A stretch of DNA of 64,000 nucleotides from Botryllus schlosseri (GCA_051294905.1 CM119371.1:11284001-11348000), one strand, 5' to 3'. Positions 3,107-54,600 are shown, counted from the stretch's first letter. The notes: a model not told the origin generated them from the sequence alone. Translations and numbers: made by a program.

Positions 3107-3362
3107 TTAACAGGTCCCGTACAGGACGTTTTTCTTGAGAGAGCCGTCTGAGGATGCAACAGTATTCTCGGCGAACGTGTAGTTTGTTTCTGTCGCTGCT
3201 AGATTAGCATCATTTGCCTCGAGTTTCTTTCCTGAAATACAAGTGTTTCCATGTGGATTCAGCACGCCATCTGTTTGTTTTTGAGATCCACCCATATCGT
3301 ATATCTCATTTTCTTTCACCTCTGCGTCAGCGCGTACACTGCTCTCTTCATTACGACGGTTC
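3107..3362 (-). CDS. Gene A terminal exon: cytoplasmic tail of mucin-stalk type I receptor (RNRRNEESSVRADAEVKENEIYDMGG...TETNYTFAEN...NVLYGTC*)
   Basis: Acceptor ttgttaag|G, phase 2 matches TM exon 7887-7989; homologous to tails at 25751-26009 and 42264-42483. Confidence 0.85.
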
Positions 3363-3691
3363 CTTAACAATAATGTAAATAGCAACTTCGAATTAATATG
3401 GTATGAAGAGTTGTTGCACAAATAGGCATTTTGTATGTGGGTGAGAAGCCATAAAAGGTTTCGGACGTGTGAAAACAAAACATATGACAATATCAACGTC
3501 TGATTCGCTCCATTGCGGAATGCCGAACTTCTTGCTATACGAGACGAAAGTCCTTATCCTGCGACTTCTAATTACGGGACAGTGCGGGCTAATCGATCAT
3601 GTGTACATGATGGGATGCCCTGACAACGGGTTATGCGACCTGAGAACAGAACCTGAATCTGCGAAACATTTCCTGCTAATATGATCTAGAT

Positions 3692-4338
3692 CAGTGGTTC
3701 TCAAACATTTTTTAGACACGAAACAGATGATACAGAACAATTGCGCGCCACTTTATCGTCATATCAAAAATACGGTAAAAAGAGCGACTAGAAAGTTGGC
3801 AACTCCAATGCATAATTTGATGGCATGGAAGGCTATGACTGATGAGAGAATTATACACGGAGCAGCAATTACGAGCTGAAATAGTGCGCAGCGCGAAATA
3901 TTTTTTACTTTAATATTTTGTCACAAACAATCATGCGCAATGATAGCACGGAGTATATAGATATTTTTGCGATTTTAGTATAAAATCTCTTCTATTCCCC
4001 TACTTGAATTTAGGTCAAACGTACCTCTAACCGTAAACTGAATCAAAAACACTACACGCATTCGCCTGTTTCTCTTAATTTAGAGACATATTCTGATCGG
4101 GGCAAGTTGCGGTATCAAATAAAATGTAACATCAGTGTAGGGATGGTGTGATGCACTTATGACATTTAAATCGGCATACAATTAGGAATATTGTCGTTGT
4201 TAAAAGTTGGGAGTTTCAGCACAAATTAAACTCATTACGAGTTCAAGAAACATCATTTTCTTCCAGGCGGTCCCGCGCCCCCTTCGTATGGATGCTTTCA
4301 CGCCCCGATGTGGCGCGACCCCAGTTTGACAACGACTG
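3692..4338. mobile_element. hAT-type MITE (CAGTGGTTCTCAA family)
   Basis: CAGTGGTTCTCAAAC ... GTTTGACAACGACTG imperfect TIR; flanks ATCTAGAT/CTCTAGCT (6/8 TSD match); interior similar to 12255-12520, 31449-31729 and 37840-38125. Confidence 0.75.
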
Positions 4339-5870
4339 CTCTAGCTAGATACTCCAACAATAGAAAATATACCATCGAAGTTGCCAGTAATCATGGTTTC
4401 AACTTTGCGCTACAAGACTTAATCTTCTCATCGTCCCGTTCACTGTAACGCCTGGTGTTGGATTTGCGTTCTAATCCAGTAGAATGATATAAAAAGACTT
4501 CTTATGCATTCAAAAGTTTCGCTCTGTGGTACAAGGCGATGGTAGCCCAGCACCAAACTCGCGCCTATCAATCAACCAACCAGCATATGAAATCATGTTA
4601 CGTCTCTGTCTATAGGATAATTCAGACATCAATCGTTTAGGGCGTTAGGCTTATAGTCCCCCGGGTATAACATATGGTTACAGCAGTAGTCAATCGTTGA
4701 ACTCTCCGTGACATTCAAAAACTTTCACCCATGACGACGAAATGACTGGATTTAAATGTTTTAACATGAGAATTTAACATTATTTTGATAAATTTGGAAA
4801 TATATGAGTTTGGTTTCCCGCTAGTATGGGCCTATCTGTATGCACCCACTATTATTGTTGTGGTATGGATTTACAATACATTGGCGCTCGGCCTCTAATG
4901 GTCATTCGCACTAGACCTACATGTATGCGATATATCGTACTTATGTACTACACATAGAATCTTCTGATTCTAAGGAAAACTTCACACCTCTGGATCAAAT
5001 CGACACTGGTGATGACTTCAGATCTATTTACCTCACCACTGCGATGGTAGAGAGGTTGAAGAACTTGGCCGGATCAAGTATGTTTCGGGCCAAGACACTT
5101 AATAGCGACGGAATCGAACCATATGATATTTACGACTGACACAGCGTGTTATATTATTCAGAATTATTGGAAATCAGTACAAATTCTGGCACGTTCACTC
5201 ATATTAAAGATTTTTTTTTCATGCTACCAATATGATTAGATGGGTAATATAAAGTGGAAATTCAAGTAATTTGTAATAAAATTGTTAATGTGAGGCAGAC
5301 ATTGAATATTTCATAAAAGTTTTCACAGAGTTATACCAAGAAATGTTAATTGTTGAACATCCACATCTGAATTTCCAATGTTAGCATACGGAACGAGAAG
5401 AGGAGCTAATGTTGGCACCATATCTTAGCTGCAGTTGGTGGCTGATCACCGCAGTAATACCCAGTAGGCAGATTGCTTGAAACGGCCTGATTTACCGTTA
5501 TGCACCCAACTTAGAATAATCTTTAAATGATCACCATCATCCATGATGTGCAGGCTACAACATACGTATATTGTCATATACCTATGAGATGTGCAAATAC
5601 TTATGAGCGAGAGCTAGCCTTCGTGACATTATGGAGGCATTTTCCATCTACGAGGTCGCATATACCAGGAAATTGCGTAGTAATACTATATAGGTACATT
5701 TAATACTAAGATCATCGGACATTTTGCTCCACTAAATACTGTTATCCGATAGCTTATATCCGAGTTATTGAAACGAGGCTTCTCCTATTTCAATAGCGGT
5801 AGCATGTAGGTTTCATGGGAATAGGAAGATCAATTATGTTAATCAGCATTGATTGCTTCCATCTATCACG

Positions 5871-6832
5871 GGGGAGATGTGGTACCGATGGATCAAAAAT
5901 TGGAAAATGATCGCTGGCCCCAAAATGTTCAGCCGAAAACAACAGGTCTTTTGCTGGCTCAGCACTTTGATACAAGCTCTACCTATCGCGCACATATACA
6001 TGAATATCCGTCTTTTCAAAAAATATTTATGGACGTTCAAAATTTGTTGCTCGAAAGTGTCATCGGTCCCCACCCGGTGGGTCCAATGGCACACGACCCG
6101 GGGACCTATGACACATATACCCTAAATACCTCAGATGTGACAACTTTTCTTGCTCAATATTATAATCTAAGCTACAGTAAGCCAAAGAAGAATGTTTGAT
6201 CGCAACCGTCAAGAAATAGAATAAATATTAACTCAAATGTTGTCATAAAATCACGTTTCGATTTAGGCTCGGACTTATAAATTTGAGGGTGCATACATAT
6301 TGTGCGAAAATCGACAGTGTGACTTCCAAACACCTCGTTATAGCGATAAAACATCATATGCAATTATTACATAAAGATTTTCTGCACGTAGGCACGTTTC
6401 ATTTGTTTTATGATTAGTATGCTTGATTATATTGCTTGATTTGGCTATTGTATCATTGGTCCCCACCCTACGAATTTTATACATGAATCGAAAAAAATTC
6501 CACTCAAGGAAAGTACTGAAAAAAATAATAGGTGCCATTATATAGCCTGATACAAGCCCTACACTTCACAATAAAAATGATTGCTGGTTTGTTCGTGTTG
6601 AAGGTTACAAAGAAAAATGTATATGTCGATATAAATTTACTTTACACCCCCCAAAACAAAAAACATCTGTGAGAGACCCCATAGCTCGCGCACGTCGAAT
6701 TTTTTTGTATGTGAGGAAAGATTTTGCCGGCAAGCAATTGTGGACAAGTTCATGGAAGGTAATCATGGAATTATCATAGAGAATTTTCAAAGTATTTTCG
6801 GTCCCAGTGATCCATCGGTACCACATCTCCCC
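5871..6832. mobile_element. MITE with 25-bp perfect TIRs, superfamily unassigned
   Basis: GGGGAGATGTGGTACCGATGGATCA at 5871-5895 and its exact reverse complement at 6808-6832; no clean TSD. Confidence 0.8.
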
Positions 6833-7886: not shown

Positions 7887-7989
7887 CTGAACAAAAATAT
7901 TATCAAGACTGTTAATACAATTAGCACCAGCAGACTGGAGGTAGCAGCAATGATCACGATGCCTTCGTCAAAAACCGTCACATCCTTAC
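7887..7989 (-). CDS. Gene A transmembrane exon (G-KDVTVFDEGIVIIAATSSLLVLIVLTVLIIFLFR)
   Basis: aatag|GT acceptor, AG|gtaagt donor, 103 nt, phase 1-2; about 23 hydrophobic residues followed by a basic residue. Confidence 0.9.
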
Positions 7990-10104: not shown

Positions 10105-10239
10105 CATCGCTAGTCCTAATGATACTTGTAGATTCCCAATCGCCTGTCGTGGTTATTATGCTTTGTGCTGATGTAGGAGAAGAGGATGTGAAAGATGTTG
10201 CCGTAGTCGTAGCGACAGGTGTGGTAGAATAAACGTTAC
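10105..10239 (-). CDS. Gene A mucin-like exon (G-NVYSTTPVATTTATSFTSSSPTSAQSIITTTGDWESTSIIRTSD-G)
   Basis: tttacag|GT acceptor, G|gtaatg donor, 135 nt, phase 1-1; homologous to 29890-30060 and 48470-48586. Confidence 0.85.
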
Positions 10240-13992: not shown

Positions 13993-14330
13993 GGGGAAAC
14001 TATAGTGGCGCAGTGTGCTAAGCGACACTGTCACGACACCAATAGTTGCGGGTCGAGTCCCGGATCTGTCACGCTTCTATGTGTCGGAGGTTTGTCTGGG
14101 CTCCTCATCGGCGACCCCGCGTCTTGAAAAGCCGAGAAGAAGAGTGAGTCGAGCTCCAAAGTCGGCAGCAGATACCTGAAAGTGGACGCACAAAAGCGAG
14201 AGAGGATAAAAAGTGACAGTGCGCGCGCAAGAAAAGCCGTCCTCATCATCCAGAGCTAAGACACTGAACTTTAGGAAACGTACTGTCTTGGCGCACAAGG
14301 CCTACAAAGGCGATTAGCGCCACTGTCATT
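13993..14330 (+). mobile_element. tRNA-derived SINE, family 2
   Basis: A box GTGGCGCAGTG, B box GGGTCGAGTCC (14050-14060); central TGTCGGAGGTT..GGCTCCT shared with 53230-53568. Confidence 0.65.
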
Positions 14331-16234
14331 GATGTGTTATGATATTATTAATTATTGATTTCTTGATACAATCGTATTCCCAAATTTTCGCGCAATGTGA
14401 CTTGACAATGCGTCGGTCAATTCGTTACTAACGCAACGCGTTGTGCTCTGCACGCGTTGAATTACATTGTCAAATATCGTTGCAACACTGGATTCTCGTT
14501 GGCACAAAGCCTGATTTTCTTCGATTAGTTAGAACGGGAGCCTTCTATCTTTCAATAAAGTAGGTCGCCGCTGGACAGACTGGTAAGACAGCACACCAAT
14601 ATCGACTTTCCACTAGTTGCGCATTTGGCAGAAAGCGAGTTCTTATTGATAAAGTCATACACTCATATTCTTCTTGCTTCAGTTAGACTTGAATCATCGT
14701 ATAATTGTATCCGCTGTATGTTTTGGTAAAAATGAGAACAGGGCCGGTCAGGACTGTATAGAAATGTCGCGAGGGTTAAGAATGCAAGAAGCAATACCTT
14801 GCGACTTATACCAGATTCGACACCACAGGGATCTCATGAGTGTAATGGTGAATTTTAAAAAATCTTATACAGTTGCAGTTCGAATTCGGCCTTCCAAAGA
14901 AAATGTCTGCCACCAATTTCTACCCATTTTATGTTCATTTGAGACCGCATTGCCCCTTATATTCCCCGCTCATAATGTGATTAGCTGATGTCTTATTTTA
15001 ATAATTACGTAATAAAAAGAAATGTAGATTCAGTGACTTGATTCTGGTGAATTGGATCGACGCACACATGTCCAGTGTTGGGCACATCTGCGCACACTCG
15101 TGAAAAAGTCGAGGGTGTATTGTCCATACCGCAACATGACGGATTTATAATCGTTTGCGAATCGTGGTATATGAAAGTTTAGGACGCATTGTCCTGAAGT
15201 ATCATTACGGTAGAGATACATAAAAATTCCACTCACCAGAACCGCCATTGCACATTTCTTCGACAAACCGGATTACGGTTCAACGCGACAGAAACGTTTC
15301 TGACTAATTTGACTTGATACTTTCTTTAAACATATGTATTTATATCATTCTGGTAAATATCACCATCGCTTCGTATTAAATACCAACCAGTTACTTCAGC
15401 TGTTTTATGTAAATTCCATACGCGAAATAATCGACGCAAACTTCTCCACTCGAATCAATACAGTTCAAACTCGACTCATATTGAAGTACTCGAATACCTG
15501 TGCATGAGCTCAACACGGTGCAATAGTCGAAGATATAGTAACCTGCGTCGTACATGCGCTGACCACTAGTGCTCCGTGAATGACGTTCGATTTTACCAAT
15601 ACGTTATCTCAACTAACAATCCTAGTAGCAATACGTTGGTGGACGACTTCCTACGAACAAATTAAAGGCAATTCTCAACATCCTTCGCAATTCTACGTCT
15701 TTTCATAGATTCAACTCCTCTATAGATATGTTTTTCATAAATATCCCACGTAAATGCCCAAAACCACCATCTACTTAAACTTCCGCTCTGCGCAATACAA
15801 GGGTACCGTTGATTTCACATTACAAGCGGTTAATACGCCCTTTAAAATCATATTTGCACTAATGGTAACGTGTCCAAATATCGCAAGTGGAAACTGAAAG
15901 TGATGGTCCGTTTTTGTGTGTTTATTTTGGTAATATAGTCGATATAAAATTGTTTGAGCGTATTAAGCAGCATATCCCAAAATTGATTCGGTCAAAAACA
16001 TGCGCAAATGATCGCACGGAGCTTGCACGTCAGTGCAAATTGGCTGCCAAAACAGACTGCTATGACGATTACCAAGCATATGCTTCGTAAATTGGTCAGC
16101 ATCTGAGTGAAAACCTGGTCTGTGCAGAGCACTATGGTGACAATATGTTCACTGTAATTGCACGTGGTAGGTCATTGTTTCATTTAAGAGAGTTAGAGTC
16201 TACTATTATTGAGTTGAACAAACCTATTTTATGC

Positions 16235-16591
16235 TAGGCTTGCCATATTTTGGAAATCTAAAAAGAGAACACTTTTTCAGAAATTTGAGACTTGCAAAAC
16301 CGGAGAAGAATTCTCATAAATCGGTGAATTTTTCCCACTTTGTGATCGGTTGACTAAAAAAAAGTCAACTTTTCGCTCAGAGCTCAAATAACCGTTTTTC
16401 ACTCCGAAATACCCGCCGGAGCGTCACTTCTGTGATAATTTACGGCATATCACTCGCATTTTGCTCTAAATGTGACCTAAATTCTCAAAAAAACCTCAAA
16501 AAAGAGGATAAAAGGGCGTCGTCCGAGGACACTTTCAAAAAAGTCAAAAAAGAGGACAAATCCTCTTAAAAGAGGATGTATGGTATCCCTA
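16235..16591. mobile_element. hAT MITE (TAGGCTTACC family) inserted in the PLE endonuclease
   Basis: TAGG...CCTA-type ends; perfect 8-bp TSD TTTTATGC. Confidence 0.9.
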
Positions 16592-16840
16592 TTTTATGCA
16601 GACAAAAAGATTTCCTCTATAACCTACAAATTTCTCATTAGTGCGTGTTGTTTCGTGCGTGCACCTGTTTATTCACAAATTGCGCTGCTACTATAGTACC
16701 GTATGACCCTATACTTCATATTTGTTATTGTTGCCATTGGTACAATGCGAATTACATGGTCTGTGATTTTGATTGTTGCGTCATACTTTGCCTTTTTAAT
16801 TTTGCTTCTAAATCTGTATAAATACCTTTAGTGTGCCGTT

Positions 16841-25750: not shown

Positions 25751-26009
25751 TTAAAAGTTCTCGTACATGGCATTATCCTCGACAAACCCACCAGGGGATT
25801 GAACACTGTTATCGACAACACTGTAGGTCGTATCTGTCGCTGTTGGATTCCAATTGATTGTTCCAGATTCCTTTCCTGAGCAAGTCACAGTGTTTTCATC
25901 TAAACGAGGAACGCCGGATCCTTGTTTTCGAGATCCATTCCTGTCGTATATCTCGTTTTCTTTTATCTCTTCGTCAGCATGTCTTCTGCTCTCTTTATTG
26001 TGACGATTC
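25751..26009 (-). CDS. Gene B terminal exon: cytoplasmic tail (RNRHNKESRRHADEEIKENEIYDRN...TDTTYSVVDN...NAMYENF*)
   Basis: Acceptor ttgttaag|G, phase 2, in frame with TM exon 28753-28855; paralogous to gene A and C tails. Confidence 0.88.
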
Positions 26010-27319: not shown

Positions 27320-28752
27320 ACTATTACCCTTTCCGGGAGTGACGCGAGGTCAGTAATGTTAATAACCACTGACTATATAGTTAATTTATTCACCCAAACC
27401 TCACATGCCCTGAGCTTGAGGGGCTTAGTAGAGGGACACTCAAGACACACACCCGACTCATACGTCAGACATCCCTGATTCGAAGTTAATACACATTATA
27501 ATAATGTTCAAATGGATTGATATTTTAATTCGTTGATGATGTCCGGCTCATTTACCGCACCAGTATTATGTATTTGATGCGTAATGTGGTAACTTTTTAT
27601 TTTGGTGACTGAGCGATAATTTCGGGTTCGCCAAATGTTTGCAGATTAGCGTAATCATTTTCCCCGTTAGTAAATGGTAGGAACTGGTGCTATAGTTACA
27701 TTTATTTGTACAATTGTGACGCATTTTGCGTTATCAAATACTGTGTTTCAGTAGCTTATATCCGAGTCATACCAAAGGATTTAATCATTTCAATAGCAGT
27801 GGAATGCACGCTTCGGCCCAATTATGCGGGCACATGATATTCAGCATGAATATTTGAATGTAATATCACACGAAAACTAGTGATTCATGAGATGCATGTA
27901 TTCATTGTGGATAATTAATTGAGGGATGTTCCAAAACATGGCCATTACATACGGACACGAACAGCTACTTATTTCATTATTGATATATGCTCTGTCTGTT
28001 CCATCACTTACGAAGTTGGCTGTACTTTTGTAGACCACAGGGCCGACGAAAAAATATGTTCATTCAGTCGGAAAAAGAATCTTACGTCAAAAACCAGTGT
28101 AAGTTCGTAGCTGATTGTTCTGGAGAGAAGCATCACATCACCAAAATGCGTACGGTACGTCACATAGGTCACCGAAATCGCACAAAATTGTTCAGTTTCA
28201 CAAAATTCCGATGTCTTTCAAAGCCCATTTCAATACTGGAATAGTTCGAAGGAATATGCAAATGAACGAATGAGATTGTGGCTCGACTTTATTGAAGAAG
28301 GGAGGTTTGTAATTACCGTAACCATAGAAATTGGGATGTCGATATATTCTTGTCGCATTATGACATCTTTCTCGCATACCGCAGGTGGTACAGATATCGC
28401 CGGGTGCGGGCTACGGTTAGTGTGTGGACTGCGAATCAACGATTGGTGGATTGCGTAATTGATTCAATCTCGTTTTTAATGTATTTTTAGGTGTTGAATA
28501 GAATTCCCTCAGCGATATTCCTTTGCGATAGCTATACATATTTTACCAGTTAAATATAAGTGAGATTTGAGCGGCGATATCTCTTCATGGTCAAAGTCTG
28601 TGAGTAAAGTCATTTGTCCTAACAGATATAATCGTATGAAGGTTGGTTAGCATAGCGTCATAGGGGCCTACTAATGGCGAGGTATGTTTCTTTGCGGAGC
28701 ATGATAATCCGCTATTTTTATTATCATAATACGATACGCAGTCGAAACTTAC

Positions 28753-28855
28753 CTTGTAAAACATATTATGAAGACCGCTAATAAAATCAGCGCTAGCAGA
28801 CTTGACATAGCCGCAATGATTACAATGTATTTGTCATCAAGCTGCGGGTCCGTAC
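28753..28855 (-). CDS. Gene B transmembrane exon (G-TDPQLDDKYIVIIAAMSSLLALILLAVFIICFTR)
   Basis: aaaag|GT acceptor, AG|gtaagt donor, 103 nt, phase 1-2. Confidence 0.9.
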
Positions 28856-28921
28856 CTTTTACTGGAATGAACAAGGGTTCAATTACCGTCAAGTACATTT
28901 TTAATTTACAAGGTACAGTAA

Positions 28922-29112
28922 NNNNNNNNNNNNNNNNNNNNNNNNNNNNNNNNNNNNNNNNNNNNNNNNNNNNNNNNNNNNNNNNNNNNNNNNNNNNNNN
29001 NNNNNNNNNNNNNNNNNNNNNNNNNNNNNNNNNNNNNNNNNNNNNNNNNNNNNNNNNNNNNNNNNNNNNNNNNNNNNNNNNNNNNNNNNNNNNNNNNNNN
29101 NNNNNNNNNNNN
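28922..29112. other. Assembly gap (191 N) in the gene B intron between mucin and TM exons
   Basis: Run of N. Confidence 1.
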
Positions 29113-29310
29113 TGCCTGCGCCATCGCAATACGGTCATCCAGTCTGCACCTCGTTTCTTTTCTCCTCCATGCTATCCGTGGATACTGAACGCCTAGCAGG
29201 ATAGCTGCTCATACCAGTTTTCGAGTGTTTAATCTGACCCGGCCGGGGTACGAACCCATGCCCTACCGATTAAATATCCGGACACATCATCATATTAGGC
29301 TAGCTCGCTA
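29113..29310 (-). mobile_element. tRNA-derived SINE head, family 3, running into the gap
   Basis: Minus strand: degenerate A box TAGCCTAATATG, B box GGGTTCGTACCCC, then GGTCAGATTAAACACTCGAAAACTGGTA. Confidence 0.55.
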
Positions 29311-29769: not shown

Positions 29770-31170
29770 AGGCATGTTCATTGCTCCCAGTAACGAACAT
29801 TTTTCTAGTGACATTGTGACGAGATATCATGGTGAGAATTATGGTCTTATGTGGACCTGGTCAATCGTGTAATATTAAGCTCTATTTACCAATAGTAGTA
29901 CTCCCAATAATGTGCGTATAAACTGTAGATTCCCATTCACTAGTCGTGTTTATTATGCCTTGTGCTGTCGTAGGAGTTGCTGTCGTAGTCGTAGTGGTAG
30001 GTAGTGCAGTAGTAGTAGTAGTAGTTGTTGTAGTAGTAGGAGGAGGAGGATCGTTGTTACCTGCCATAAATAAGGTAAGTGTAATGTCGTCAAAAATGTT
30101 TGCGAGGATAGTATATTGTTTACATGGATTTCCGCATCCGTCAATATTGGAACGGGGAGAAATTTATTCACAATCCTTTCAAACTGAACTCTCTCGTCCT
30201 CGCTTGTATTAAATCGAGTCACTGCTATTTTATAACGAGTGTTAGTAACTGAAATAAAATACATTGGTACCTATAGATGTCGAGGACATGGAATGCACTG
30301 CACATGTATTAGTTCATTTTATGTGATTGCATATAAAGTTAGACGCGGGTTCGACTATCTATATGAGTAAACATGAAGATATAGCGGTGTCAAATAAACC
30401 TAAGATACCCGACGATATAATTCGAGGTACCAAGAACTTCATTCCAATGACACGATATCAAAAAGCATATGCACCGATTTTGAATCAGTGATTCGTGTTG
30501 CTCATCCCTGCATGAATTCAATGACGTGTGGTCAGGATAACCAAAGGAACGTTATGGAGACCTTCAATGATTATATTGACAATGCCGATTTGTATTTTCT
30601 ATCGATGTTTTTGAATAACTAAATGTTCAATGTTATTACACCCGAAATTGCGGAATTTGCATGTACAAGTTCAAAAATATACAAAGACCGCGTGGAGACA
30701 CAGATTAATCTGCCTCACTGGTTGTTGGCTAAGTATGTGACTATCGCAGCGCAGGCGACACAAGACAGGGCTAAGGAATTCGTGAACCGATGGTTTAGAA
30801 TGAATCGTTAGCTGCCAATTTCAACATGCAATGCAGAGCAAGTATTTTCAATCACTAGCTACCTTCAGTTGTGGATACGCATAGTAGCTTTCATATAGTC
30901 TGCGTTTGATGAATGCTAATGCGATAAGAAACAGGCCACCAAGTGAATCAACTACGATTAATGGTTCATAAACTGACTTTAATTGGGTCAGTGTCTCGCC
31001 ACTCATGAACTTCGCCGCATGTCACTTCGTGACACATTCCATTTTGCGATTGTTCATCGTTTCTTTGGCCACATGCATTCAATGAAATACGATGCACAAG
31101 AATGCGACACAAACCACAGAGACCTGCCTAACGATGGCATATTTTCGTATGAATACAATATGGCGATGCG
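29770..31170. repeat. Segmental paralogy B/C: mucin exon and flanking introns, homologous to ~48350-49960
   Basis: Collinear blocks alignable by eye, e.g. AGTTAGACGCGGG, CTGCCTCACTG, GATAAGAAACAGGCC, CGCATGTCACTTCGTGA, AGAGACCTGCCTAA. Confidence 0.85.
29890..30060 (-). CDS. Gene B mucin-like exon (G-NNDPPPPTTTTTTTTTTALPTTTTTTATPTTAQGIINTTSEWESTVYTHIIGSTTI-G)
   Basis: tttatggcag|GT acceptor, G|gtaaat donor, 171 nt, phase 1-1; N-T-T sequon. Confidence 0.88.
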
Positions 31171-40594: not shown

Positions 40595-40982
40595 TTCTAC
40601 GAAGTAGAAAAGGCACTTTTTACTAAGACTAGAGCAGGTACACATTTTTCCAATTTGTCATCAATACAGTTTATCAATTCATGTAGTAAAATCGTGTATT
40701 TGGTACATTCGATGACTCTACTGATGAAAGAACTGCATGTAACACGCTTAGCATTTTGATTAAAAAATTTAAGTGAGAAATATCAAATATAGACATTCGC
40801 TGATTCATAGCATCAGTGTATGTGTCTCGTTCCACTTTTCATCCTGCTTACATTTTTTTGCGATAACGTTGAATGTTTACTTTGCTTTCGGTTCTGTATC
40901 GCCGTTAAGGTGCTACATTACATATAGGCGTACTGGACAACAATTGTCTTGTAGTCGTTGTCCTTACACATAGGCTACTTAC

Positions 40983-41028
40983 CAATTTCTACGAGTACGA
41001 CCGTAATCAATACTAATAACGCAACCAT
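40983..41028 (-). CDS. Gene B first coding exon: signal peptide (MVALLVLITVVLVEI-G)
   Basis: ATG with an upstream in-frame stop, hydrophobic core, G|gtaagt phase-1 donor compatible with the mucin exon; homologue at 54552-54600. Confidence 0.7.
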
Positions 41029-41754
41029 ACCGTATGAGCAGCACAGGAACAAGTGCGCACGACTGTGAGTGACGGAATGCTCAATCGGTTGCGCAACAAT
41101 GGTCAATACGCTTGCGGTTTTCGCTGCTTCTCACCTGCTCCCATACGGCATTGTTGCGTCACAATACAAAACTCCGTTACAATGCAACATTCGAGGCCGA
41201 TTCTGGGAGGTTGCAGGACCACGAGCAGAATAAAATTTATATTTTTGCAATCAGTACCGCGGAAGCGTTCGATTGATAACTGTTTTCTCAAATTTGATGC
41301 TCGACAAGCCGGTCAAAAATTACCGTCAAATTGCATTTAGCCAAATGAAAAGTGTGATGTAGACCAATTTCATTGAGCCGTGAGATTTGCTTGTGTCCAC
41401 ACCATATAGGACACTATTGCTAAACTACTGGACTTCATAAATATTATAAACGAGAATAAGTAGGTAACATAATTCGTAACATCTGCAAAATGGAACTAAT
41501 CAGCGATTAATACCAAAGCTTGTCGCTCAAAGTGAAAGTCTTATTAAAGTGCATTTGCTTATATCTTGAAATGTATCCGCCCTACAGAATGACGCGAAGT
41601 ACGAATGCTGCTGCAAAGCATACACACGACCGCCCGTGAGATCAATGGACCTTGTAGGTTTTTGCTGAAATGATATCGAGATTTTAATGATATATTTATG
41701 TCAGAAAATAACGACAAAACAATAATATGGAAGAATTACCATAGTTCACAAACC

Positions 41755-41760
41755 TTTATT
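41755..41760 (-). promoter_or_regulatory. Probable polyadenylation signal (AATAAA) of gene C
   Basis: First minus-strand AATAAA I found downstream of the 42264 stop (~500 nt); conserved in the paralogous block at 62835-62840. Confidence 0.55.
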
Positions 41761-42263
41761 CAAACCTTGTTCATATCGGCAGAAGTGATCAATTAAGATA
41801 TTTTGTCATAAATGTTTGAGGTAACAAACATATTTGCTGTTACCTTCCTGTAGCACACGCTTTGCAGGCGCTCTTGGTATTGGGTCACTTGTGCATCTAA
41901 TTTTTCAACAATTTACGGACATGGCGGACATTTGCGGACTTCGGATATCCAGTTTATATTGAGTTGGCCTACGAAAATTAGTTTATGCGCCGATTGGATT
42001 CATGCGTATTGATAGAATCAATTTGCAGCGACATTTTCCCCTAATGACGTCTTGTGCATCCCCGAATCTGGTCAAAGTAGTCTGTTTTTCTACTCAAGTA
42101 GAGGTGGAAGTAAGGCCGTATATTTTGACTCAACTACAAGTGGATGGTATGCACTGAACACGATATTAATAAAATGTTGTAAAACCAAAATTCCAAGTTA
42201 TTTCATCATCCTGTCATGTAGTGCCATCAATCAACACTCTTTAACAAGTCCCGAAGTGAATGT

Positions 42264-42483
42264 TTATCTGTCAACGACCTCGTAGGTATCACCACCGGCT
42301 TGTGCAGAATTGGAAGTCATATCGATCCCAGATTCATACGCATTTTTTTCTTCGAGTTTCGCTCCAGAACATATCCCGTCGTTGTCGTACGATGATTGCT
42401 TTCGCGATTCATCCAATTCGTAAATTTCGTATTCGTTCACCTCTGAGTGAACATGTAAGCTGCCGTCTTTTCTACGTCCATTT
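42264..42483 (-). CDS. Gene C terminal exon: cytoplasmic tail (RNGRRKDGSLHVHSEVNEYEIYELDESRKQSSYDND..ICSG..NAYESG..GGDTYEVVDR*)
   Basis: cttttaag|A phase-2 acceptor in frame with TM exon 43534-43636; aligns with the A and B tails. Confidence 0.87.
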
Positions 42484-43533: not shown

Positions 43534-43636
43534 CTAATGTATTTGATTATGAATACTCCAATGAAAATCAGCAGCAGGCAGCTTGCCGCTGATGCAATGA
43601 TTGCAATAATAGTTGCGAGACTTTCAGACTCCATGC
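43534..43636 (-). CDS. Gene C transmembrane exon (G-MESESLATIIAIIASAASCLLLIFIGVFIIKYIR)
   Basis: catttcag|GC acceptor, AG|gtgagt donor, 103 nt, phase 1-2, same length as in A and B. Confidence 0.9.
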
Positions 43637-45004: not shown

Positions 45005-45148
45005 CTACTCCCGTACTTTGACTGGTACCTGTAGATTCAAATTGGCCCGCCGTTGTTATCTTGCCCAATGGTGTGGATACATACATAGTATCGGTAGTTG
45101 TGGCGGTGGTGGCTGACGCCGCTGCAGTAGTACTGGTCTCCGTGCTGT
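45005..45148 (-). CDS. Gene C mucin-like exon (D-STETSTTAAASATTATTTDTMYVSTPLGKITTAGQFESTGTSQSTGV-G)
   Basis: cttgtgatag|AC acceptor, G|gtatga donor, 144 nt, phase 1-1. Confidence 0.8.
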
Positions 45149-46847: not shown

Positions 46848-46988
46848 TAATTCCCGTACTTTGGATTGTACCTGTGGATTCAAGTTGGCCCGCCGTTGGT
46901 CTCATGCCAAATGGTGTGGATACATACATATTATCAGTGGTGGTGACGGTGGTGGTTGCAGCAGCAGTAGTACTGGTCTCCGCGATGT
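46848..46988 (-). CDS. Gene C mucin-like exon, duplicate (D-IAETSTTAAATTTVTTTDNMYVSTPFGMRPTAGQLESTGTIQSTGI-)
   Basis: cttgtgatag|AC acceptor, A|gtatgg donor, 141 nt, phase 1-1; the indel versus the sister exon is in frame. Confidence 0.78.
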
Positions 46989-47830: not shown

Positions 47831-48469
47831 AATTTTTCTCAACTAAATCAATTCCTGTGTTGTGTTGTTTCGCTTCGCAATCCATTTCTCCGTTCTGTTC
47901 TTATGCTTAATTGAATGATAAGATATTTACAATGTGACTGTGCGATTGGATGGTGCATCTATAGTTACATTCGTTTACATGGTAAATCGTGCAAATTGAT
48001 GCTCAGTTTCAGGTAAGTTTGAGGTTCAAGGATGTATGCAATATGAAAATGGAGTCCTGAACTTGGAATAATATCTACAGTGCGGTTTTGCATCACCCCA
48101 AACCACAGTGGATGCTGAGAACCAGACATATATGGCATTTTAGTAGGATATGTAAAATCGCGGATTTCAAATCTTAGGGGAATCCCTCCTTTTCAGTCGA
48201 TATTCCTCCAACTCAACATGCACACAGATGCAATGGATGGGTCACAGAAAAAAAGTAGATAGAATACGTTTTTAAGGCATAAAGCACGGGAAACGGACTG
48301 AAAACCATGACGTTTTTAAAGTCGGTCAATTCTGAACAACCCTAATGCTCATGTTCATTGCACATTGTAACGAAGATATTTGTAGTGACATTACGACGAG
48401 ATGTCGTAGTAATAGGTATTATGGTATTATGTCGGCCTGGTAACTCGGGTAATATTAAGTTATAATTAC

Positions 48470-48586
48470 CATCAGTAGTACTCCTGTTAATGTGCATAGA
48501 TTTCCATTCATCAGTCGTGTTTATTGTGCCTTGTGCTGTCGTAGTCGTAGTGGGACGTAGGGTAGGAGGAGGAGGATCCGTGTTAC
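48470..48586 (-). CDS. Gene C mucin-like exon (G-NTDPPPPTLRPTTTTTAQGTINTTDEWKSMHINRSTTD-G)
   Basis: ttagcag|GT acceptor, G|gtaatt donor, 117 nt, phase 1-1; direct homologue of 29890-30060. Confidence 0.85.
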
Positions 48587-50439
48587 CTGCTAATCAATTA
48601 GGTGTAATAATATCGTCAAAAAAAGTTTCCAAGAGTGGTATATTAATTATATGGATGTCCGCACTTGTCGATATTGTAATGGGAGGGAATTTAATCACAA
48701 TCCTTTCAATTTGAACTCTCACGTCCTTGCTTATGTAAAATCGGATCACTACTGTACTTTATAATAATTTCATTAACAGAAATAAAATATATTAGTAGCC
48801 TACCCATGTCTCAAATGAGAGAATAAATTACTCTGCTTACTTATCACTCAATTTTATGTGATAGCATATAAAATATAATCAAGTTAGACGCGGGGCTGGC
48901 TATCTATATGAGTAAACATGGAGATATAACGGTGTCGACCAAGCCTAAGATGCCCGACGATATATTACGAGGCTCTCAAAATTGAATTATTCCTCTTCAT
49001 TCCCTTAAGATTTTCTTACTCAATATTGGACAGACTTGACTTGGTTTGAAATGCCTTATTCCAATCACACGACATCATAAAGCATATGAACCGATTTTAA
49101 ATCAGTGATTTATGCTGCTCATGGATGAGTAAAAGAAAATCATGAAAACCTAAAATGATTATAATAACAATAAACATTGTTAATTTCGGTAGATTTTCAT
49201 GAATGAATATATTTTTAACATTATTACAGCCAAAATCGCGGGATTTGCATATTTAAAGTTAAAAATATGTAGAGCTGAATGAATCCGAAATTATAAGACG
49301 CTCATAATTTATGATAACTGGCATCATCGAGTGCTACTTTTTGCACTGATCCAAAAAAATATCGATGATGTCAGAGCAGCAGAACCACATGCCAAATCGT
49401 CCAAGACCTTGTAATTGCTACGTACAAAGACCGCGTATAGAGACACAATAACTGACCGGACACATATTACTCTGCCTCACTGATTGTTGGCTAACTGTAC
49501 GACTATCGCGGCGCAGTGAGACACAATCCAGCGCCATCGAATTCGTGTATCGATGATTAGGGATGAATCGCGTTGTTGCGAATTCCAACATGTAGCGCAG
49601 AGCAAGTGCATTCCCCTACTAATGTAGACGTTAATGTATTTTGAATCACTAACTACCTACAATTGTGGGTATTTATAGTAGCTTCTTACACAGCCTGCGT
49701 GTAAACAGTACTGATGTGATAAGAAACAGGCCTCCAACTGCATCAGCTACGATTTAGGGTTCATAAATTTATAAATATGATTCTAATCGGGTCTGTACCT
49801 CACCAATCATGAACCACACCGCATGTCACTTCGTGAATCATACGATTTCGCGAATGTTGGCCGCTTCTTTAGCCACGTTATTTCAATGAAATCCATTGCA
49901 CAAGATTGCGTCACTAACGATAGAGACCTGCCTAATTTGATGGCAAATTTTCGTAAGAATACAATATGCCAGTAACATCGGAATTTACGACATATTATGG
50001 TAATAGAATGATGTAGCCTACATTATCGGAATAGTATTTTCGGTTGGTGTTCTTAAATACTATAAGCGGCCATTTTCATCAGGCGCCATATGAAGCAGTT
50101 CGGGGACCATAAAGCACCTGTTGACTAAATCATAGGGGGCACCACGGATTTAGGCCTCAGGACAGAGATACTAAAATTATTTCGATTAGGGTTCAGCTGA
50201 TCATTTCCGTCTCAAATATATAGTATTAGATATCAGTTTTGAGATCAAGTAACTACCTTCGAGTCACTAATCATGTCGAGTCAAGTCAATCAAGTTTCGA
50301 AGGTGACTCGAGGCAAGTCAAGTCACTGGTTTTTGGAGGTGACACGAGTCAACTCAAATCGAGTCAAGTCATGAGTAAAGACACAATTCAAGTAATATCG
50401 AATTTTCGAAGTATATGAATGATGATTCACAGTCATTAC

Positions 50440-50878
50440 TAGGACAAGTTTTTGTTGCAGTTAAATCCTAGGAAAGTTGCATTAATTATTGAAAAAAGTT
50501 GCAGAAGTTGCATTTTGACCACATTTTGCTCGGTTGACCAAAAAAAAGGTCAACTTTCCAGATTCACTAAAAAAAACGGTCAATTTTCCGGCTCAGCTTC
50601 CGAAATACGAAAAAGCTTTACTTCGGTGCTGGTTTACGGTGTTTCAGTCGAATTTGGCCGTGTATTTCACCAAAATCGAAAATACTTTCATGAAAAATCG
50701 AAACAGTTGCAAAATGTTGCAAAAAGTTTCATGAAAAAAATGGACAAAAGTTGCAAAAAGTTGCACTATTAGATTCCTTCAACCAGCTTGAAACAGCATT
50801 CTACATATCTTACGAGTGTTTAGGAAGCTACCGGAAGCTGTAAAAAGAAGTTGCAAAAGTTGCAAAAAACTTGCCCTA
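50440..50878. mobile_element. hAT MITE (TAGGACAAG / CTTGCCCTA termini, AGTTGCA arrays)
   Basis: TIR-like ends; TSD GTCATTAC/GTAATTAC (7/8). Confidence 0.75.
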
Positions 50879-51635
50879 GTAATTACATTTTGCTAGCTTT
50901 GTGAAAGACGATTGGCCATGTATCTTGAATTAAATATACATACAATATGGCATTTCATCGCTCACGCACACGTAGAACTGCTGATAATATACGTGAGGCA
51001 AGATAGAGGATCGAATACGAAGCCTCGAGAAGTTGAAGCAAATTGATACGGCACAGTACATCACCCAGCTACACATCCGCTAGAATATAACTGCATAAAC
51101 TACCGGTATATTCGTAAGATTTGAATCATATACAAGATAGTTGGGGACGAGTCGTCTAAGAAACAGAGATACATTGCTATTATAATAATCTACGGCACAT
51201 TACCGGAGGCTGTGATCATTTCGTTTGCGGTTAATTTATTTTTGATATGACATTAGAGGATCAATGAAACGTGCTATCCGTGAATAAATGGTTGCTCTCA
51301 CAGGTCATACCGGCGTTTCGCCACCAACACAAACATAATCAAGATATATTGATTTGATCGGCACCGTGTATTTGATGACTTGAAATTGACTCGTAAATTT
51401 TGCTCCTAGCAACGAGTCAATCCACATGTCTGAAGCGCCGAGTCAAGTCAAGTTAACTCATTTTTGCAAAGTTTATACGGAAAAATGACTCTAGTCATCC
51501 CAACCCTGTTAGATATACTGTTGCCTAAGAAATAAACACATCAAGAGTAAACGGAACGTCACCGTCATGTGGCATATGACATATCAAATCATTAGGTTTG
51601 CTTGCGACGATTTCAAGTTTTATTCCAGTGATCGG

Positions 51636-52535
51636 CGGGGTTGGGATGACTCGAGTCATGACTTGACTCGAGTCAGACTCGAGTCGTGGATTGACTAGTG
51701 ACTCGGAGCAGAGTTTACGACTCAATTTCAAGTCATCAAGTAATCGGCGTCGATAAAAATCTTGCATACCTTGCATATGGTCGGATTGCTCTCGAAACGC
51801 TCGTGCAATCCGTGAGAGCGACTAATCATTTAATGATCGTGCGTTTCACTGTGCCTTCATTGTTCATTCACAAATAAATTGACCGCAAACGAAGTGATCG
51901 AAGCTTATACCTTACGATGTTGTAAACTAGTATAGTAAAGTAATTTTATAGAGAAATGTATATTTCTGTTTTCTGTTCTTACCTCAAACAAACCTCTTGT
52001 TTTATTAAAATTGAATTCGAATATCGTTTATATAGTCATCAACCACTGGCGTAGGCTCGTATTGTATCTATCAATTTGTAAATGGGTTCATATACTGCAT
52101 CTTATCAATTCGTTTCTCTATTCTCTATTTTGGCTGGTAACTGTAAACTGAGGCTATGCAATTACTTACGTAGTTTAGCAGTTCTACGTATATGTGAGCG
52201 ATACATCGCCTTCTTGCGTGTATATTTAACTTATATTCGTTCATTGGTTCAGAATCAATGACCACTCAATCTGTATTTCAGACAGCTAGCAAAATGCAAT
52301 GACGTAATCATGCCTCATACTTCGAAAAGACAACTTGACTTGAATTGTGAATTGACTCGTGACTTGATTTGACTTGACTTGGATCGACTTGACTCGGGTC
52401 ACCTCCAAAAATCGAGTGACTTGACTTGACTCGAGTCACCCTCGAAAATCGATTGACTTGACTTGACTCGAGTCAAAATGTACAATGTCTCGAAATGACT
52501 TGTGACTCGACGGTAGTGACTTGATCCCAACACTG
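51636..52535. mobile_element. hAT element with GACTCGAGTC/GACTT arrays; inverted copy of 56157-57069
   Basis: Ends CGGGGTTGGGA / TCCCAACACTG; TSD GTGATCGG/GTGATCGT (7/8); not present in the gene B paralogous block. Confidence 0.85.
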
Positions 52536-53229
52536 GTGATCGTTGGCACGAACTGCCCAAAATCGTCCCACTTTTAGCACACCTGAACTAGATTTCCAAA
52601 CTTCAGGTAGATTTGTGCGAAAACTTACGATTTCTAATAGCATTTAAACACACTTCGAGGTAGAAATCAGCCAAAAGCAATACACATTAAAAGGAATAAT
52701 CGAGATTAACCCTGAAAATTGCGAAATTCCCCCAAATGGAAAATTTCACCCCTTTGGGAACCAGTGCCCTATAGGCGACGACCAAATGCATACCATAAAT
52801 TATTCTATCATCGTATACCACAGATCGCCTATAGCTTCACCGATAAACGGCCAGTCAACTGCTTTTGCACGAAAGGATAATGTCAGTAGTAGTCCACTTT
52901 CAAGTAACTCATGTCATTTTTACTGAGTCAACTGCGGAAATGCTAGGAGTTGTAAAATTCTGCTGATGAAGTCTAGCACTTCCGATTAAAACTGACATCA
53001 ACGATTACTAAGCGACGCTGATCTATGCAAAGTTATCTACACTTCGAAGCACTTCACTCGATAAGGAAGTGGCATTGGCAACGGAACTAACCAGCCATAA
53101 ATGAGTCAATGGCATATCTTATATGCAGCCACGATCTCATATATCATATTCAATGTAAAAAAAATGCAATTTCGTTGATAACACATAACAAATACATTTC
53201 GTCAGATTATATTTTTATCGGCACAAGAC

Positions 53230-53568
53230 ACACACACAATGTACAATGCGATATACAAGTCAGACAATGCGATGTAATGAACAGATATGGGAATGCCGAA
53301 CGCGTTGGGTTATGTTAAACTGGCATCCATCTCGACCTATAGCTCGATGTCAGTCTTTTTCGATGCTAATCTTTCTTTGTTGGTCCTTTTTAGAAGCTAT
53401 TACTTGCTATTTCTTTTCTTTATCGGATCATTTTTCTGGGCTTTTATGTCGCCGTTCGAACATCGTCACGGCGGACTAGGAGCCGCGAATAACCTCCGAC
53501 AGCTGGTCTTCAACCCGGGTCGCCGGCAAAGATGGCGGCGCTGCTCACCACCACGCTATCTCCGGCGA
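53230..53568 (-). mobile_element. tRNA-derived SINE, family 2-like
   Basis: Minus strand: GGAGATAGCGTGGTGG A box, degenerate B box GGGTTGAAGACC, TGTCGGAGGTT..GGCTCCT shared with 13993-14330; 3' boundary approximate. Confidence 0.55.
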
Positions 53569-54551
53569 CTCTTAATTCGATTAGAATCTTTTGGCAGCCG
53601 TCAATATACAAATTGAAAATACGAATTGACTCCCAGATTAATAAAAAGTTTGAATTATCCTTAAAATTTTCTTCGCGCTTGGCGCGGTTCAATTCGAGTT
53701 GATTTTCGATACTAATAAAATAGTGTCCTTGTAATCTGAGCCCCCCAGTACAGATGGAAACAGCAGAAATGATGTGCCCCATAAAGAAATACCACATTGT
53801 AATCCAGCTCTTCTCATCATGGAAGACATTCTTCATGGTACGCCTAGGTTTAGGCGATTCCAATATATTTCCAGTACCGACAGTCCTGATGGGACGTCAA
53901 GAAATAACAGCACGCAACAAAGAGGACTGATAATAATTGGTACACCGAAGATGCAGCACAGAATTACTAACTTCCCTAAATTTTCGAAGACACCCCCTGC
54001 ATCAACTCTACCGATGAATCTGACCACATGGGCTTAGTAAGGATGAATATTTTTGAATCATTGGATGTATCACGGCATCGTACCTTTGCTTGCTTGAGGC
54101 ATCAATTTACCAATTCTGTACTTATGAAAAGAGGAATATGACATACTGTAGCTTTTGACGAGGCATTGTTTCAGGAACACGTACCTAGACATGACTAGAT
54201 ATTGACGATCTCGAAGCATATTAGCAAACATCCGCAAACAGAATACCTTCGCCGTAGTTCGTTCCTTGCAGACGAGTTCAGTATAGCATATGTAATTTTT
54301 TTTCTGCTAAATTAACGGTGTTGATCTTGAACGGGTTACTATTCGAGTACGTACGACCTGAAGGAAATATCAGACAAAGACATTCGCTGATTCTAGCGTC
54401 AGTGTCAATGTGTATTTTCACTTTTCCATTTCTGCTTATACTTTTGCGAGAACGCTGAATGTTTAATATGCTTTAAGATTTGTATTGCCGTCATGGCTCT
54501 ACATATACTGGACAACAATTATCTTCAATTCTTTGTTATTGTACTTATTAC

Positions 54552-54600
54552 CAATTTCTACAAGTGCCACCACAATCAATACTAACAATACTATTGCGTA
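54552..54600 (-). pseudogene. Gene C signal-peptide exon homologue lacking an in-frame ATG (..YAIVLLVLIVVALVEI-G)
   Basis: Clear homology to 40983-41028 with G|gtaata donor; the position of the B ATG reads ATA or GCA depending on alignment; a SINE tail abuts at ~54605. Confidence 0.6.

What the first reader, a model, noticed from the sequence alone, without database searches (positions are those of the whole stretch)
3107..54600. Tandem array of three sialomucin-like type I receptors with tyrosine-signalling tails, invisible to the ORF track
Seen: three minus-strand genes with the same exon logic, [signal, phase 1]-[Thr/Ser/Pro exon(s), phase 1-1]-[103-nt TM exon, phase 1-2]-[terminal tail exon]. 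The simplest gene B model (41028-40983, 30060-29890, 28855-28753, 26009-25751) is 579 nt (192 aa) spread over about 15 kb, with no folded ectodomain found. The paralogues are strongly diverged in protein yet keep exon sizes and phases. Established: this architecture (O-glycosylated stalk, TM, tyrosine-motif tail) is that of vertebrate sialomucins such as CD43 and glycophorins; clustered, diversifying receptors with ITIM/ITSM-type tails typify innate immune families. Inference: a lineage-specific, expanding haemocyte/immune or self-recognition receptor family that may be unannotated.
Basis: partly seen in the sequence, partly recalled or inferred. Interest (0 to 1): 0.85.

Follow-up and report, generated by a model that had tools for sequence, protein, structure and literature searches.

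The report
Small mucin-like membrane protein gene cluster
A sea-squirt-type genome carries three neighbouring, fast-evolving copies of a small gene for a sugar-coated surface protein with a tyrosine-bearing tail; one copy is transcribed and spliced, one has lost its start codon, and nothing yet ties them to immunity.

Summary
The three paralogous minus-strand exon sets are real. Each has one or more Thr/Ser-rich exons in phase 1-1, a transmembrane (TM) exon in phase 1-2 and a tail exon, in the same order three times.

- **Gene B** is transcribed and spliced. They join 29890 to 28861, not to 28855, so the TM exon is 109 nt and the protein 194 aa.
- **The assembly gap** (28922-29112) lies inside the intron that these transcripts remove. 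It does not touch the coding sequence.
- **Not established:** the exon 1 to exon 2 junction of B, any transcript of A or C, and a signal exon for A.
- **Gene C:** its signal-type exon begins ATA instead of ATG, with an in-frame stop upstream.
- **No known family:** no exon matches Pfam or PDB. A profile of the tails, scored against 1.84 billion proteins, finds only two genomic ORFs from one other run, so this is a lineage-restricted orphan family.
- **Conserved motif:** the tail shares an acidic E-[VI]-x-E-x-E-I-Y-[DE] that resembles a Src substrate. The ITSM-like motif is in B only.
- **Array history:** the array is a mosaic. B and C share about 6-11 kb of 5' sequence, B and A share the 3' exons, and it holds one dead relic exon.

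The immune or self-recognition reading is untested. The scan had not noted this family on other DNA. Verdict: real, ordinary in kind, modest interest.

The parts
40983..41028 (-). Gene B exon 1 (46 nt, phase 1): ATG plus a 14-residue hydrophobic signal-type peptide, donor GTAAGT.
   Evidence: Read directly. Its junction to exon 2 is not tested by RNA.
29890..30060 (-). Gene B exon 2 (171 nt, phase 1-1): Pro4-Thr10 mucin-like stalk, one NTT sequon and an S-E-W-E-S-T motif. The Thr run is coded by an (ACT)n-like microsatellite at 29985-30039.
   Evidence: The donor at 29890 is confirmed by a joint in contigs of X26 and X27.
28922..29112 (.). Assembly gap (191 N) inside intron 2 of gene B.
   Evidence: Transcripts join 29890 directly to 28861 and skip it.
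28753..28861 (-). Gene B exon 3, the TM exon. It is 109 nt as transcribed (acceptor CAG at 28862-28864).
   Evidence: joints 28861|29890 and 26008|28752 (cut +1) in two runs, in record 1 of X26 and record 8 of X27.
25751..26009 (-). Gene B exon 4: the 86-aa cytoplasmic tail plus stop codon. It holds ENEIYD, TTYSVV and a C-terminal MYENF. The contigs run on to about 25703.
   Evidence: The transcripts carry two amino-acid differences (G30A, V33F) and one silent change.
10105..10239 (-). Gene A Thr/Ser-rich exon (135 nt, phase 1-1) with a G-D-W-E-S-T motif.
7887..7989 (-). Gene A TM exon (103 nt, phase 1-2). It is 55% identical to B's in protein and 74% in DNA.
3107..3362 (-). Gene A tail exon (85 aa plus stop). 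It holds ENEIYD, TNYTFA and VLYGTC-end. The relative P0001 is 68% identical.
14284..14329 (-). Weak candidate for gene A exon 1 (46 nt, ATG, hydrophobic peptide, donor GTACGT). It is not alignable to B or C and is unverified.
   Evidence: blastn with the B and C exon-1 regions finds nothing in A's territory.
54552..54594 (-). Gene C homologue of exon 1. The hydrophobic peptide is kept, but the first codon is ATA, an in-frame stop lies upstream at 54687-54685, and there is no ATG.
48470..48586 (-). Gene C exon 2 (117 nt, phase 1-1), B-like, with Pro4, a Thr run and a D-E-W-K-S motif.
   Evidence: dS to B's exon 2 is 0.27.
46848..46988 (-). Gene C exon 3 (141 nt, phase 1-1), a 'type-2' Thr/Ala-rich exon with G-Q-L-E-S-T.
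45005..45148 (-). Gene C exon 4 (144 nt, phase 1-1), a tandem duplicate of exon 3 (74% aa identity).
43534..43636 (-). Gene C TM exon (103 nt, phase 1-2).
42264..42483 (-). Gene C tail exon (73 aa plus stop). It holds EYEIYE, SSYDND, NAYESG and DTYEVV.
55608..55721 (-). Dead third copy of the type-2 exon, upstream of C's exon 1. The acceptor AG is lost and a 1-nt insertion gives an immediate stop in phase 1.
48350..54588 (-). Segment of C that is collinear with B 29773-41019 at 67-86% DNA identity per block (the long blocks 70-78%). It covers exon 2, all of intron 1 and exon 1 up to just past the start codon.
   Evidence: A further block, B 41426-41853 = C 62500-62933, appears.

Best explanation
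The window holds a tandem array of three paralogues, plus one dead exon, of an orphan, lineage-restricted gene family. The genes encode small type I membrane proteins.

**Protein layout.**
- A short hydrophobic signal.
- One to three exon-encoded, cysteine-free, Thr/Ser/Pro-rich stalk units, each ending in a small [DEQ]-[WFL]-[EK]-S-T motif.
- One TM helix with a conserved small-residue face (I-I-A-A-x-S-S-L-L).
- A basic juxtamembrane cluster.
- A disordered tail of 73-86 aa.

**What is shown.**
- Gene B is a real, spliced, minus-strand mRNA encoding 194 aa.
- A and C are its paralogues.
- C lacks an initiator ATG in this assembly.
- The array evolved by segmental duplication or exchange, exon duplication and decay.

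**What is inferred.**
- The ectodomain is densely O-glycosylated, as in a sialomucin-like brush.
- The one invariant tail element, E-[VI]-x-E-x-E-I-Y-[DE], is a Src-family-type phosphorylation site. Once phosphorylated it would dock SH2 proteins, with the paralogue-specific C-terminal tyrosines (B: TxYxxV and YxN) tuning which partners bind.

**My odds.**
- B is a real protein-coding gene of this architecture: about 0.85.
- Tyrosine phosphorylation is the tail's working principle: about 0.4.
- The role is immune or allorecognition: about 0.1-0.15.
For: - **Paralogy and exon logic:**
- **Spliced transcripts of B** in contigs of two runs from two studies, with GT..AG on the minus strand.
- **Stalk composition:** 46-54% Ser/Thr/Pro with no cysteine; the TM segment is followed by R-N-R/G-R basic residues.
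- **Tail motif:** E, E, E-I-Y are invariant in A, B, C and in both relatives.
- **Kinase resemblance:** the standard Src substrate peptide is AEEEIYGEFEAKKKG (PMC7298416).
- **Signalling machinery in ascidians:** Src and Syk kinases, SHP-1 and Grb2 are expressed in Botryllus (PMC12582321).
- **Tail disorder:** no confident fold, mean pLDDT 43.
- **No hidden domain exon:** there are no Pfam hits in intron ORFs, and no block of B's intron 1 is conserved with C as coding sequence.
- **Some constraint:** dN/dS is 0.3-0.75. A-type and B-type tails are kept open in a second organism, at 68% and 51% identity.
Against: - B's exon 1 to exon 2 junction, and any expression of A or C, are unproven.
- Two bulk RNA runs, sampled at 6-13%, had zero depth on B's exons.
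- Residues +1 to +3 after the invariant Tyr (DRN, DMG, ELD) fit no standard SH2 consensus that I know of.
- The ITSM-like and YxN motifs are in B only, and could be chance among several tyrosines and many motif definitions.
- B's tail is only a little more conserved against its relative (51%) than the translated intron just upstream (about 39%), so most of the tail is close to neutral.
- The signal peptide has no basic n-region and no clear cleavage site. No predictor was available to test it.
- O-glycosylation and phosphorylation are inferred from composition alone.
Confidence: 0.5

Rival explanations
1. These are passive surface mucins. They act as a glycocalyx, anti-adhesive or lubricating coat. 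The tail would serve only for sorting or for ERM/cytoskeleton anchoring through the basic juxtamembrane cluster, and the tyrosines would not be signalling sites.
For: - The stalk is the bulk of the protein and its unit is what gets duplicated (C exons 3 and 4).
- Most of the tail evolves nearly neutrally.
- The juxtamembrane R-N-R-R/H-N-K/E cluster resembles, from my own knowledge, the FERM-binding clusters of CD43, CD44 and podoplanin.
- No SH2 consensus follows the invariant Tyr.
Against: An eight-residue acidic block with Ile-Tyr is invariant across paralogues whose tails are otherwise only 35-46% identical. That argues for a specific recognised site, and its form is that of a tyrosine-kinase substrate.
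Confidence: 0.28
2. One reading: a diversifying innate-immune or self-recognition receptor family that signals through ITIM/ITSM-type motifs in haemocytes.
For: - B has T-T-Y-S-V-V, which fits TxYxx[VI].
- The genes are clustered, fast-evolving and lineage-restricted.
- Transcripts of B carry two replacement changes against one silent change relative to the assembly.
- Ascidian allorecognition co-receptors do use tyrosine motifs (PMC12582321).
Against: - The motif is absent from A, C, P0001 and P0002.
- There is no ligand-binding domain of any kind.
- dN/dS is below 1 in every comparison.
- The Botryllus FcoR receptors are Ig/Sushi proteins with different motifs.
- There are no expression data by cell type.
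Confidence: 0.1
3. Only B is a working gene, and A and C are decaying duplicates. This concerns status rather than mechanism, and it can hold together with any of the explanations above.
For: - C has ATG changed to ATA, an upstream in-frame stop, and no counterpart of B's 0.4-kb promoter-proximal region.
- A dead exon copy sits at 55721-55608.
- A has no recognisable signal exon.
Against: - All six C exons (768 nt) and all three A exons (494 nt) remain open with intact splice sites.
- An A-type tail is kept open at 68% identity in a second organism.
- The ATA could be a variant of this haplotype, or C may use another 5' exon.
Confidence: 0.3
4. The models are the C-terminal ends of larger receptors whose domain exons were missed, either in the long introns or in the gap.
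For: - Intron 1 of B is 11 kb and the gap has unknown content.
- Exon 1 to exon 2 was not bridged by RNA.
Against: - No minus-strand ORF in the introns hits Pfam.
- B's intron 1 is alignable to C's throughout, but no block behaves as coding sequence. Amino-acid identity is 39-63% at 70-78% DNA identity, and stops are frequent.
- Transcripts jump the gap directly.
- B and C keep a signal-type exon immediately before the stalk exon.
Confidence: 0.06

Closest known systems
Vertebrate small sialomucins and mucin-type type I glycoproteins (CD43/leukosialin, glycophorin A, podoplanin, CD164, CD99)
   Same: The layout is the same: signal peptide, cysteine-free Ser/Thr/Pro-rich stalk with no folded domain, a single TM helix, a basic juxtamembrane cluster and a short tail. 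The TM helix has a small-residue face, as in glycophorin-type helices. This is a likeness of architecture, drawn from my own knowledge of these proteins.
   Different: No sequence relationship was found, with no Pfam or PDB hit for any exon. The stalk is built from symmetric phase 1-1 exon units that carry a [DEQ]-[WFL]-[EK]-S-T motif. The tail carries an invariant acidic EIY[DE] block that, as far as I know, these proteins do not have.
Transmembrane adaptor proteins of vertebrate leukocytes (LAT, NTAL/LAB, PAG/Cbp, SIT, LAX)
   Same: They are small single-pass proteins without a ligand-binding domain, whose disordered tails carry several tyrosines. B ends in Y-E-N, a pYxN (Grb2/Gads-type) form. 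LAT is reported missing from ascidian genomes (PMC12582321).
   Different: Those adaptors have very short ectodomains and a juxtamembrane CxxC palmitoylation site. Here only B has a single Cys at the membrane edge. There are only 3-5 tyrosines, and the YxN is not conserved in A, C or the relatives.
Botryllus fester co-receptors (FcoR) and other clustered ITIM/hemITAM receptors
   Same: They are clustered, fast-diverging type I membrane proteins of a tunicate, with tyrosine motifs in the tail.
   Different: FcoRs have an Ig-Sushi-Ig-Ig ectodomain and ITIM, hemITAM or [AD]VYxxV motifs. The present genes have no domain and a different invariant motif.

Membership tests
Glycophorin A, syndecan, podoplanin, CD34 and other Pfam-defined mucin-type membrane protein families | Significant match of the TM or tail region to the family's profile | tested here: not met
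   hmmscan of every exon translation of A, B and C found nothing at or near any gathering score. The best was TMEM154 at E 0.56 and 10.5 bits against a 30.3-bit cut-off. The pieces were scanned exon by exon, not as joined proteins.
Sialomucin-like type I glycoproteins (an architectural class, not a homology family) | N-terminal signal, Ser/Thr/Pro-rich cysteine-free ectodomain, single TM, cytoplasmic tail | tested here: met
   Composition is 46-54% Ser/Thr/Pro with 0 Cys. A 23-residue hydrophobic TM is followed by basic residues. A hydrophobic N-terminal exon is present in B. The signal peptide was judged by eye only.
Sialomucin-like type I glycoproteins (an architectural class) | Dense O-glycosylation, in vertebrates sialylated | not testable with these tools
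   No glycosylation predictor or experiment was available. This is inferred from runs of up to 10 Thr next to Pro.
ITIM/ITSM immunoreceptors | Conserved [SIVL]xYxx[IVL] or TxYxx[VI] in the tail | tested here: not met
   Only B (T-T-Y-S-V-V) fits. At the same position A has T-N-Y-T-F-A, P0001 has T-T-Y-T-F-A and P0002 has A-T-Y-S-S-I, and C has a deletion there.
ITIM/ITSM immunoreceptors | Extracellular ligand-binding domain (Ig, lectin) and recruitment of SHP or SAP-type SH2 proteins | tested here: not met
   No domain was found in the exons, the intron ORFs or the intron blocks conserved between B and C. Recruitment is not testable here.
Transmembrane adaptor proteins (LAT type) | Juxtamembrane CxxC palmitoylation motif and multiple conserved YxN or YxxL sites | tested here: not met
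   There is no CxxC. Only B has a single Cys at the TM end, and the one YxN is in B only.

The most novel reading that the evidence does not exclude
The family could be an ascidian-specific set of transmembrane scaffold proteins. They would pair with domain-bearing receptors through the conserved small-residue face of the TM helix and supply a Src-phosphorylated docking tyrosine. That would functionally fill the place of LAT-type adaptors, which ascidians are reported to lack, possibly in blood or vascular cells involved in allorecognition.
Probability: 0.07. Interest if true: 0.7.

Novelty: new member of a known kind. Interest (0 to 1): 0.3.

Why it matters
If the models hold, they add an apparently unannotated, lineage-restricted family of small mucin-like surface proteins to a tunicate genome. 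They also give a clean small example of how such arrays evolve. Symmetric phase 1-1 stalk exons are duplicated, a 5' gene segment of about 6-11 kb is shared between two neighbours whose 3' halves are much older, and one copy has lost its start codon.

The invariant acidic EIY[DE] block is a concrete, testable handle on function. Without expression by cell type, or any biochemical data, the family says nothing yet about immunity or self-recognition. Orphan mucin-like membrane proteins are common in animal genomes.

Tried and rejected
- **Profile search of the three tails** against 1.84 billion representative proteins. It gave only two true hits, both genomic ORFs from one Logan run, plus one spurious repeat protein.
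- **Word-indexed searches of 5.8 billion proteins**, one with A's tail ORF and one with a five-sequence alignment. Both returned the same two hits, with no named protein. The cluster look-up shows they are singletons.
- **Contigs encoding the two hits.** They could not be fetched because the sample file is too large, so there is no synteny and no dN/dS against orthologues.
- **Pfam, PDB and ESM Atlas.** Pfam on all exon pieces and 17 intron ORFs gave nothing. The PDB sequence search gave nothing. The ESM Atlas gave only sub-threshold bacterial beta-helix look-alikes, which I rejected as noise.
- **AlphaFold on B's tail.** No fold was predicted, but with three sequences this is weak evidence.
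- **Rfam and tRNA scans of the window.** Both were empty.
- **Signal exon of A.** A search by blastn and by a hydrophobic ATG-exon scan gave only a weak candidate.
- **Upstream start for C.** None was found.
- **Literature.** No paper describes a comparable ascidian family; the nearest is FcoR, which differs. The accession of the relative's run appears in no paper.
- **Earlier scan notes.** A look-up by sequence and one by words gave nothing on this family.
- **Simple unequal crossover as the origin of B.** I rejected it because the duplication product would carry the opposite hybrid (A 5' / C 3').

Full report
**1. What is in the sequence**

The window is 39.4% G+C and has one gap, at 28922-29112.

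They have canonical acceptors and donors and join into an open 579-nt frame.

A tblastn of that product against the window finds the same kinds of exon twice more, on the same strand and in the same order.

| Gene | Signal-type exon | Thr/Ser-rich exon(s) | TM exon | Tail exon |
|---|---|---|---|---|
| A | none recognised (weak candidate 14329-14284) | 10239-10105 (135 nt) | 7989-7887 (103 nt) | 3362-3107 |
| B | 41028-40983 | 30060-29890 (171 nt) | 28861-28753 as transcribed (109 nt) | 26009-25751 |
| C | 54594-54552 (starts ATA) | 48586-48470, 46988-46848, 45148-45005 | 43636-43534 (103 nt) | 42483-42264 |

All ectodomain exons are symmetric phase 1-1, and the TM exon is phase 1-2. Within-window E-values run from 1.6e-16 (A's tail) to 4.7e-5 (A's TM exon), and the collinear triplication excludes chance.

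**2. The gap and the RNA evidence**

Only one read-laying run was allowed, so I laid four runs on 25200-31199.

- Two runs kept as contigs come from two different studies (X26, X27). I chose them because they hold about half the words of the tail-exon stretch. Each carries a single contig that reads 25703/4-26008, then 28752-28861, then 29890 onward.
Both show CT..AC on the plus strand, which is GT..AG on the minus strand.
- B is therefore a spliced minus-strand transcript.
The exon is 109 nt and the protein 194 aa, with an extra Val-Lys. The 103-nt form was not seen.
- The gap lies wholly inside the removed intron, 60 nt from the acceptor. No frame crosses it, and the two sides are joined in one transcript in the assembled order and orientation. 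A rare cassette exon hidden in the gap cannot be excluded.
- The contigs break in the (ACT)n-coded Thr run (29970-30059), so the exon 1 to exon 2 junction is untested. X26's record 7 ends at 29969, and no contig piece was laid on 30061-30199. This is weakly consistent with splicing at 30060.
- Two bulk RNA runs, sampled at 6% and 13%, had no reads on B's exons. Expression is therefore low or restricted.
- Relative to the assembly, the transcripts differ by two replacements in the tail (G30A, V33F) and one silent change.

**3. Status of A and C**

- **Gene C.** Its exon 1 is homologous to B's from just after the start codon into the intron. The first codon is ATA, an in-frame TAA lies at 54687-54685, and there is no ATG between them. 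B's 0.4 kb just upstream of the ATG has no counterpart in C. Even so, all six C exons (768 nt) are open with good splice sites. C is therefore either recently disabled, a haplotype variant, or served by an unknown 5' exon.
- **Gene A.** No exon in its territory resembles exon 1. A scan for ATG-hydrophobic phase-1 exons gives one candidate of the right length, 14329-14284 (46 nt), with a mediocre donor. It is unverified.
- **Relic exon.** A further copy of C's exon 3/4 unit lies at 55721-55608, upstream of C's exon 1. Its acceptor AG is lost, and a 1-nt insertion gives an immediate stop in phase 1. It is a relic.

**4. How the array evolved**

- B and C are collinear at 67-86% DNA identity per block (the long blocks 70-78%) from B 29773-41019 to C 48350-54588. 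This covers exon 2, the whole of intron 1 and exon 1. A further block matches B 41426-41853 to C 62500-62933.
- Downstream of that, B and C share no alignable DNA. Their TM and tail exons are only 35-36% identical in protein.
- B and A align only at the exons (TM 74% and tail 71% in DNA) and are 46-55% identical in protein there.
- Synonymous distances agree. B-C exon 2 gives dS 0.27, against 0.8-1.5 for B-C TM and tail. A-B gives 0.5-0.68 throughout.
- So a 5' segment was copied or converted between B and C long after their 3' halves split.
- Exons 3 and 4 of C are a tandem exon duplication (74% aa identity, dS 0.39).
- dN/dS is 0.3-0.75 in all comparisons. This is relaxed purifying selection on short sequences, with no sign of positive selection at this resolution.

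**5. Is anything hidden in the introns?**

- None of 17 ORFs of 85 aa or more in or near the genes hits Pfam.
- B's intron 1 can be aligned to C's, so a missed coding exon should stand out. None does. Translated blocks are 39-63% identical at 70-78% DNA identity, and many carry stops in C.
- The ectodomain is thus just the stalk. It is 46-54% Ser+Thr+Pro, has no cysteine and has 0-3 N-glycosylation sequons.

**6. Relatives and known families**

- No exon piece matches Pfam or any PDB chain.
- A profile of the three tails, scored against 1.84 billion representative proteins, gives two true hits.
  - P0001 is 68% identical to A's tail.
  - P0002 is 51% identical to B's tail. Its N-terminal part is translated intron that parallels B's own intron.
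- Both are unnamed singletons from contigs of one Logan run. Two word-indexed searches add nothing.
- The A/B duplication is therefore older than the split from that organism, and the family is narrowly distributed.
- An earlier agent of this scan identified the genome as the colonial sea squirt Botryllus schlosseri (note s1-229057). I did not test this. It is compatible with the G+C content, the repeat load and the mix of runs.

**7. How it probably works**

Shown: the proteins have a hydrophobic N-terminus (B; the peptide is kept in C), a mucin-like stalk, one TM helix with a conserved I-I-A-A-x-S-S-L-L face, a basic R-N-R/G-R cluster, and a tail with no predicted fold (mean pLDDT 43, shallow alignment).

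The one element invariant in A, B, C and both relatives is E-[VI]-x-E-x-E-I-Y-[DE]. Acidic residues at -2 and -4 (with another at -7) and Ile at -1 recall the acidic run and the Ile at -1 of the standard Src substrate peptide AEEEIYGEFEAKKKG (PMC7298416). Botryllus expresses Src and Syk kinases, SHP-1 and Grb2 (PMC12582321).

Inferred: the stalk is O-glycosylated, and the invariant tyrosine is phosphorylated and docks a partner. The C-terminal tyrosines vary by paralogue:

| Paralogue or relative | C-terminal tyrosine motifs |
|---|---|
| B | TTYSVV and YENF |
| A and P0001 | T-x-Y-T-F-A and L-Y-G-T |
| C | YESG and YEVV |
| P0002 | ends early |

The residues after the invariant Tyr fit no SH2 consensus I know of. 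The ITSM-like match is confined to B, so the 'ITIM/ITSM family' label fails as a family trait.

A passive glycocalyx or ERM-anchored mucin is the main rival.

**8. Comparison and verdict**

- In architecture these genes resemble small vertebrate sialomucins. More loosely, they resemble transmembrane adaptors. They are not members of any sequence-defined family tested.
- They differ from the Botryllus FcoR receptors, which have Ig and Sushi domains and other motifs.
- The report that ascidians lack LAT leaves room for a speculative adaptor role, to which I give about 7%.
- Overall this is a real orphan family with no annotated relative found here, of an ordinary kind.

Noticed in passing
window 27050-27320: A short dispersed repeat in B's intron 3 is very abundant in RNA: word depth 4375 in X26 and 520 in X27. 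In both raw-read runs, almost every read laid on the stretch lies here and runs on into unrelated sequence, so the repeat sits in many transcripts. An inverted partial copy lies at 42069-42141.
   Followed up: no
window 1-86, 16231-16598, 18816-19181, 32668-33119, 58445-58823: A repeat family of about 450 nt has at least five copies at 83-97% identity, in both orientations. It lies in the introns and spacers of the array and is probably a non-autonomous transposable element.
   Followed up: partly
window 28749-29196: The two longest ORFs listed here (28749..29138 on the minus strand, 28768..29196 on the plus strand) run through the 191-N gap. They are artefacts of translating N.
   Followed up: yes
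window 27769-28234 and 29115-29918: Run X26 also holds contigs over B's introns that differ from the assembly by 2.5-4.5%. One of them crosses the exon 2 donor unspliced (29563-29918). They may be pre-mRNA of a divergent allele, or copies from elsewhere in the genome.
   Followed up: no
window 41426-41853 and 62500-62933: A 430-nt block 0.4 kb upstream of B's ATG recurs at 75% identity 7.9 kb upstream of C's exon 1. The dead exon copy and several repeats lie in between. Whether the block is a shared regulatory region or another repeat is open.
   Followed up: no
window 29985-30039: B's Thr run is coded by an imperfect (ACT)n microsatellite of 18 units, nested in 24- to 27-nt repeats. It is a likely source of stalk-length polymorphism, and it is where the transcript contigs break.
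   Followed up: no
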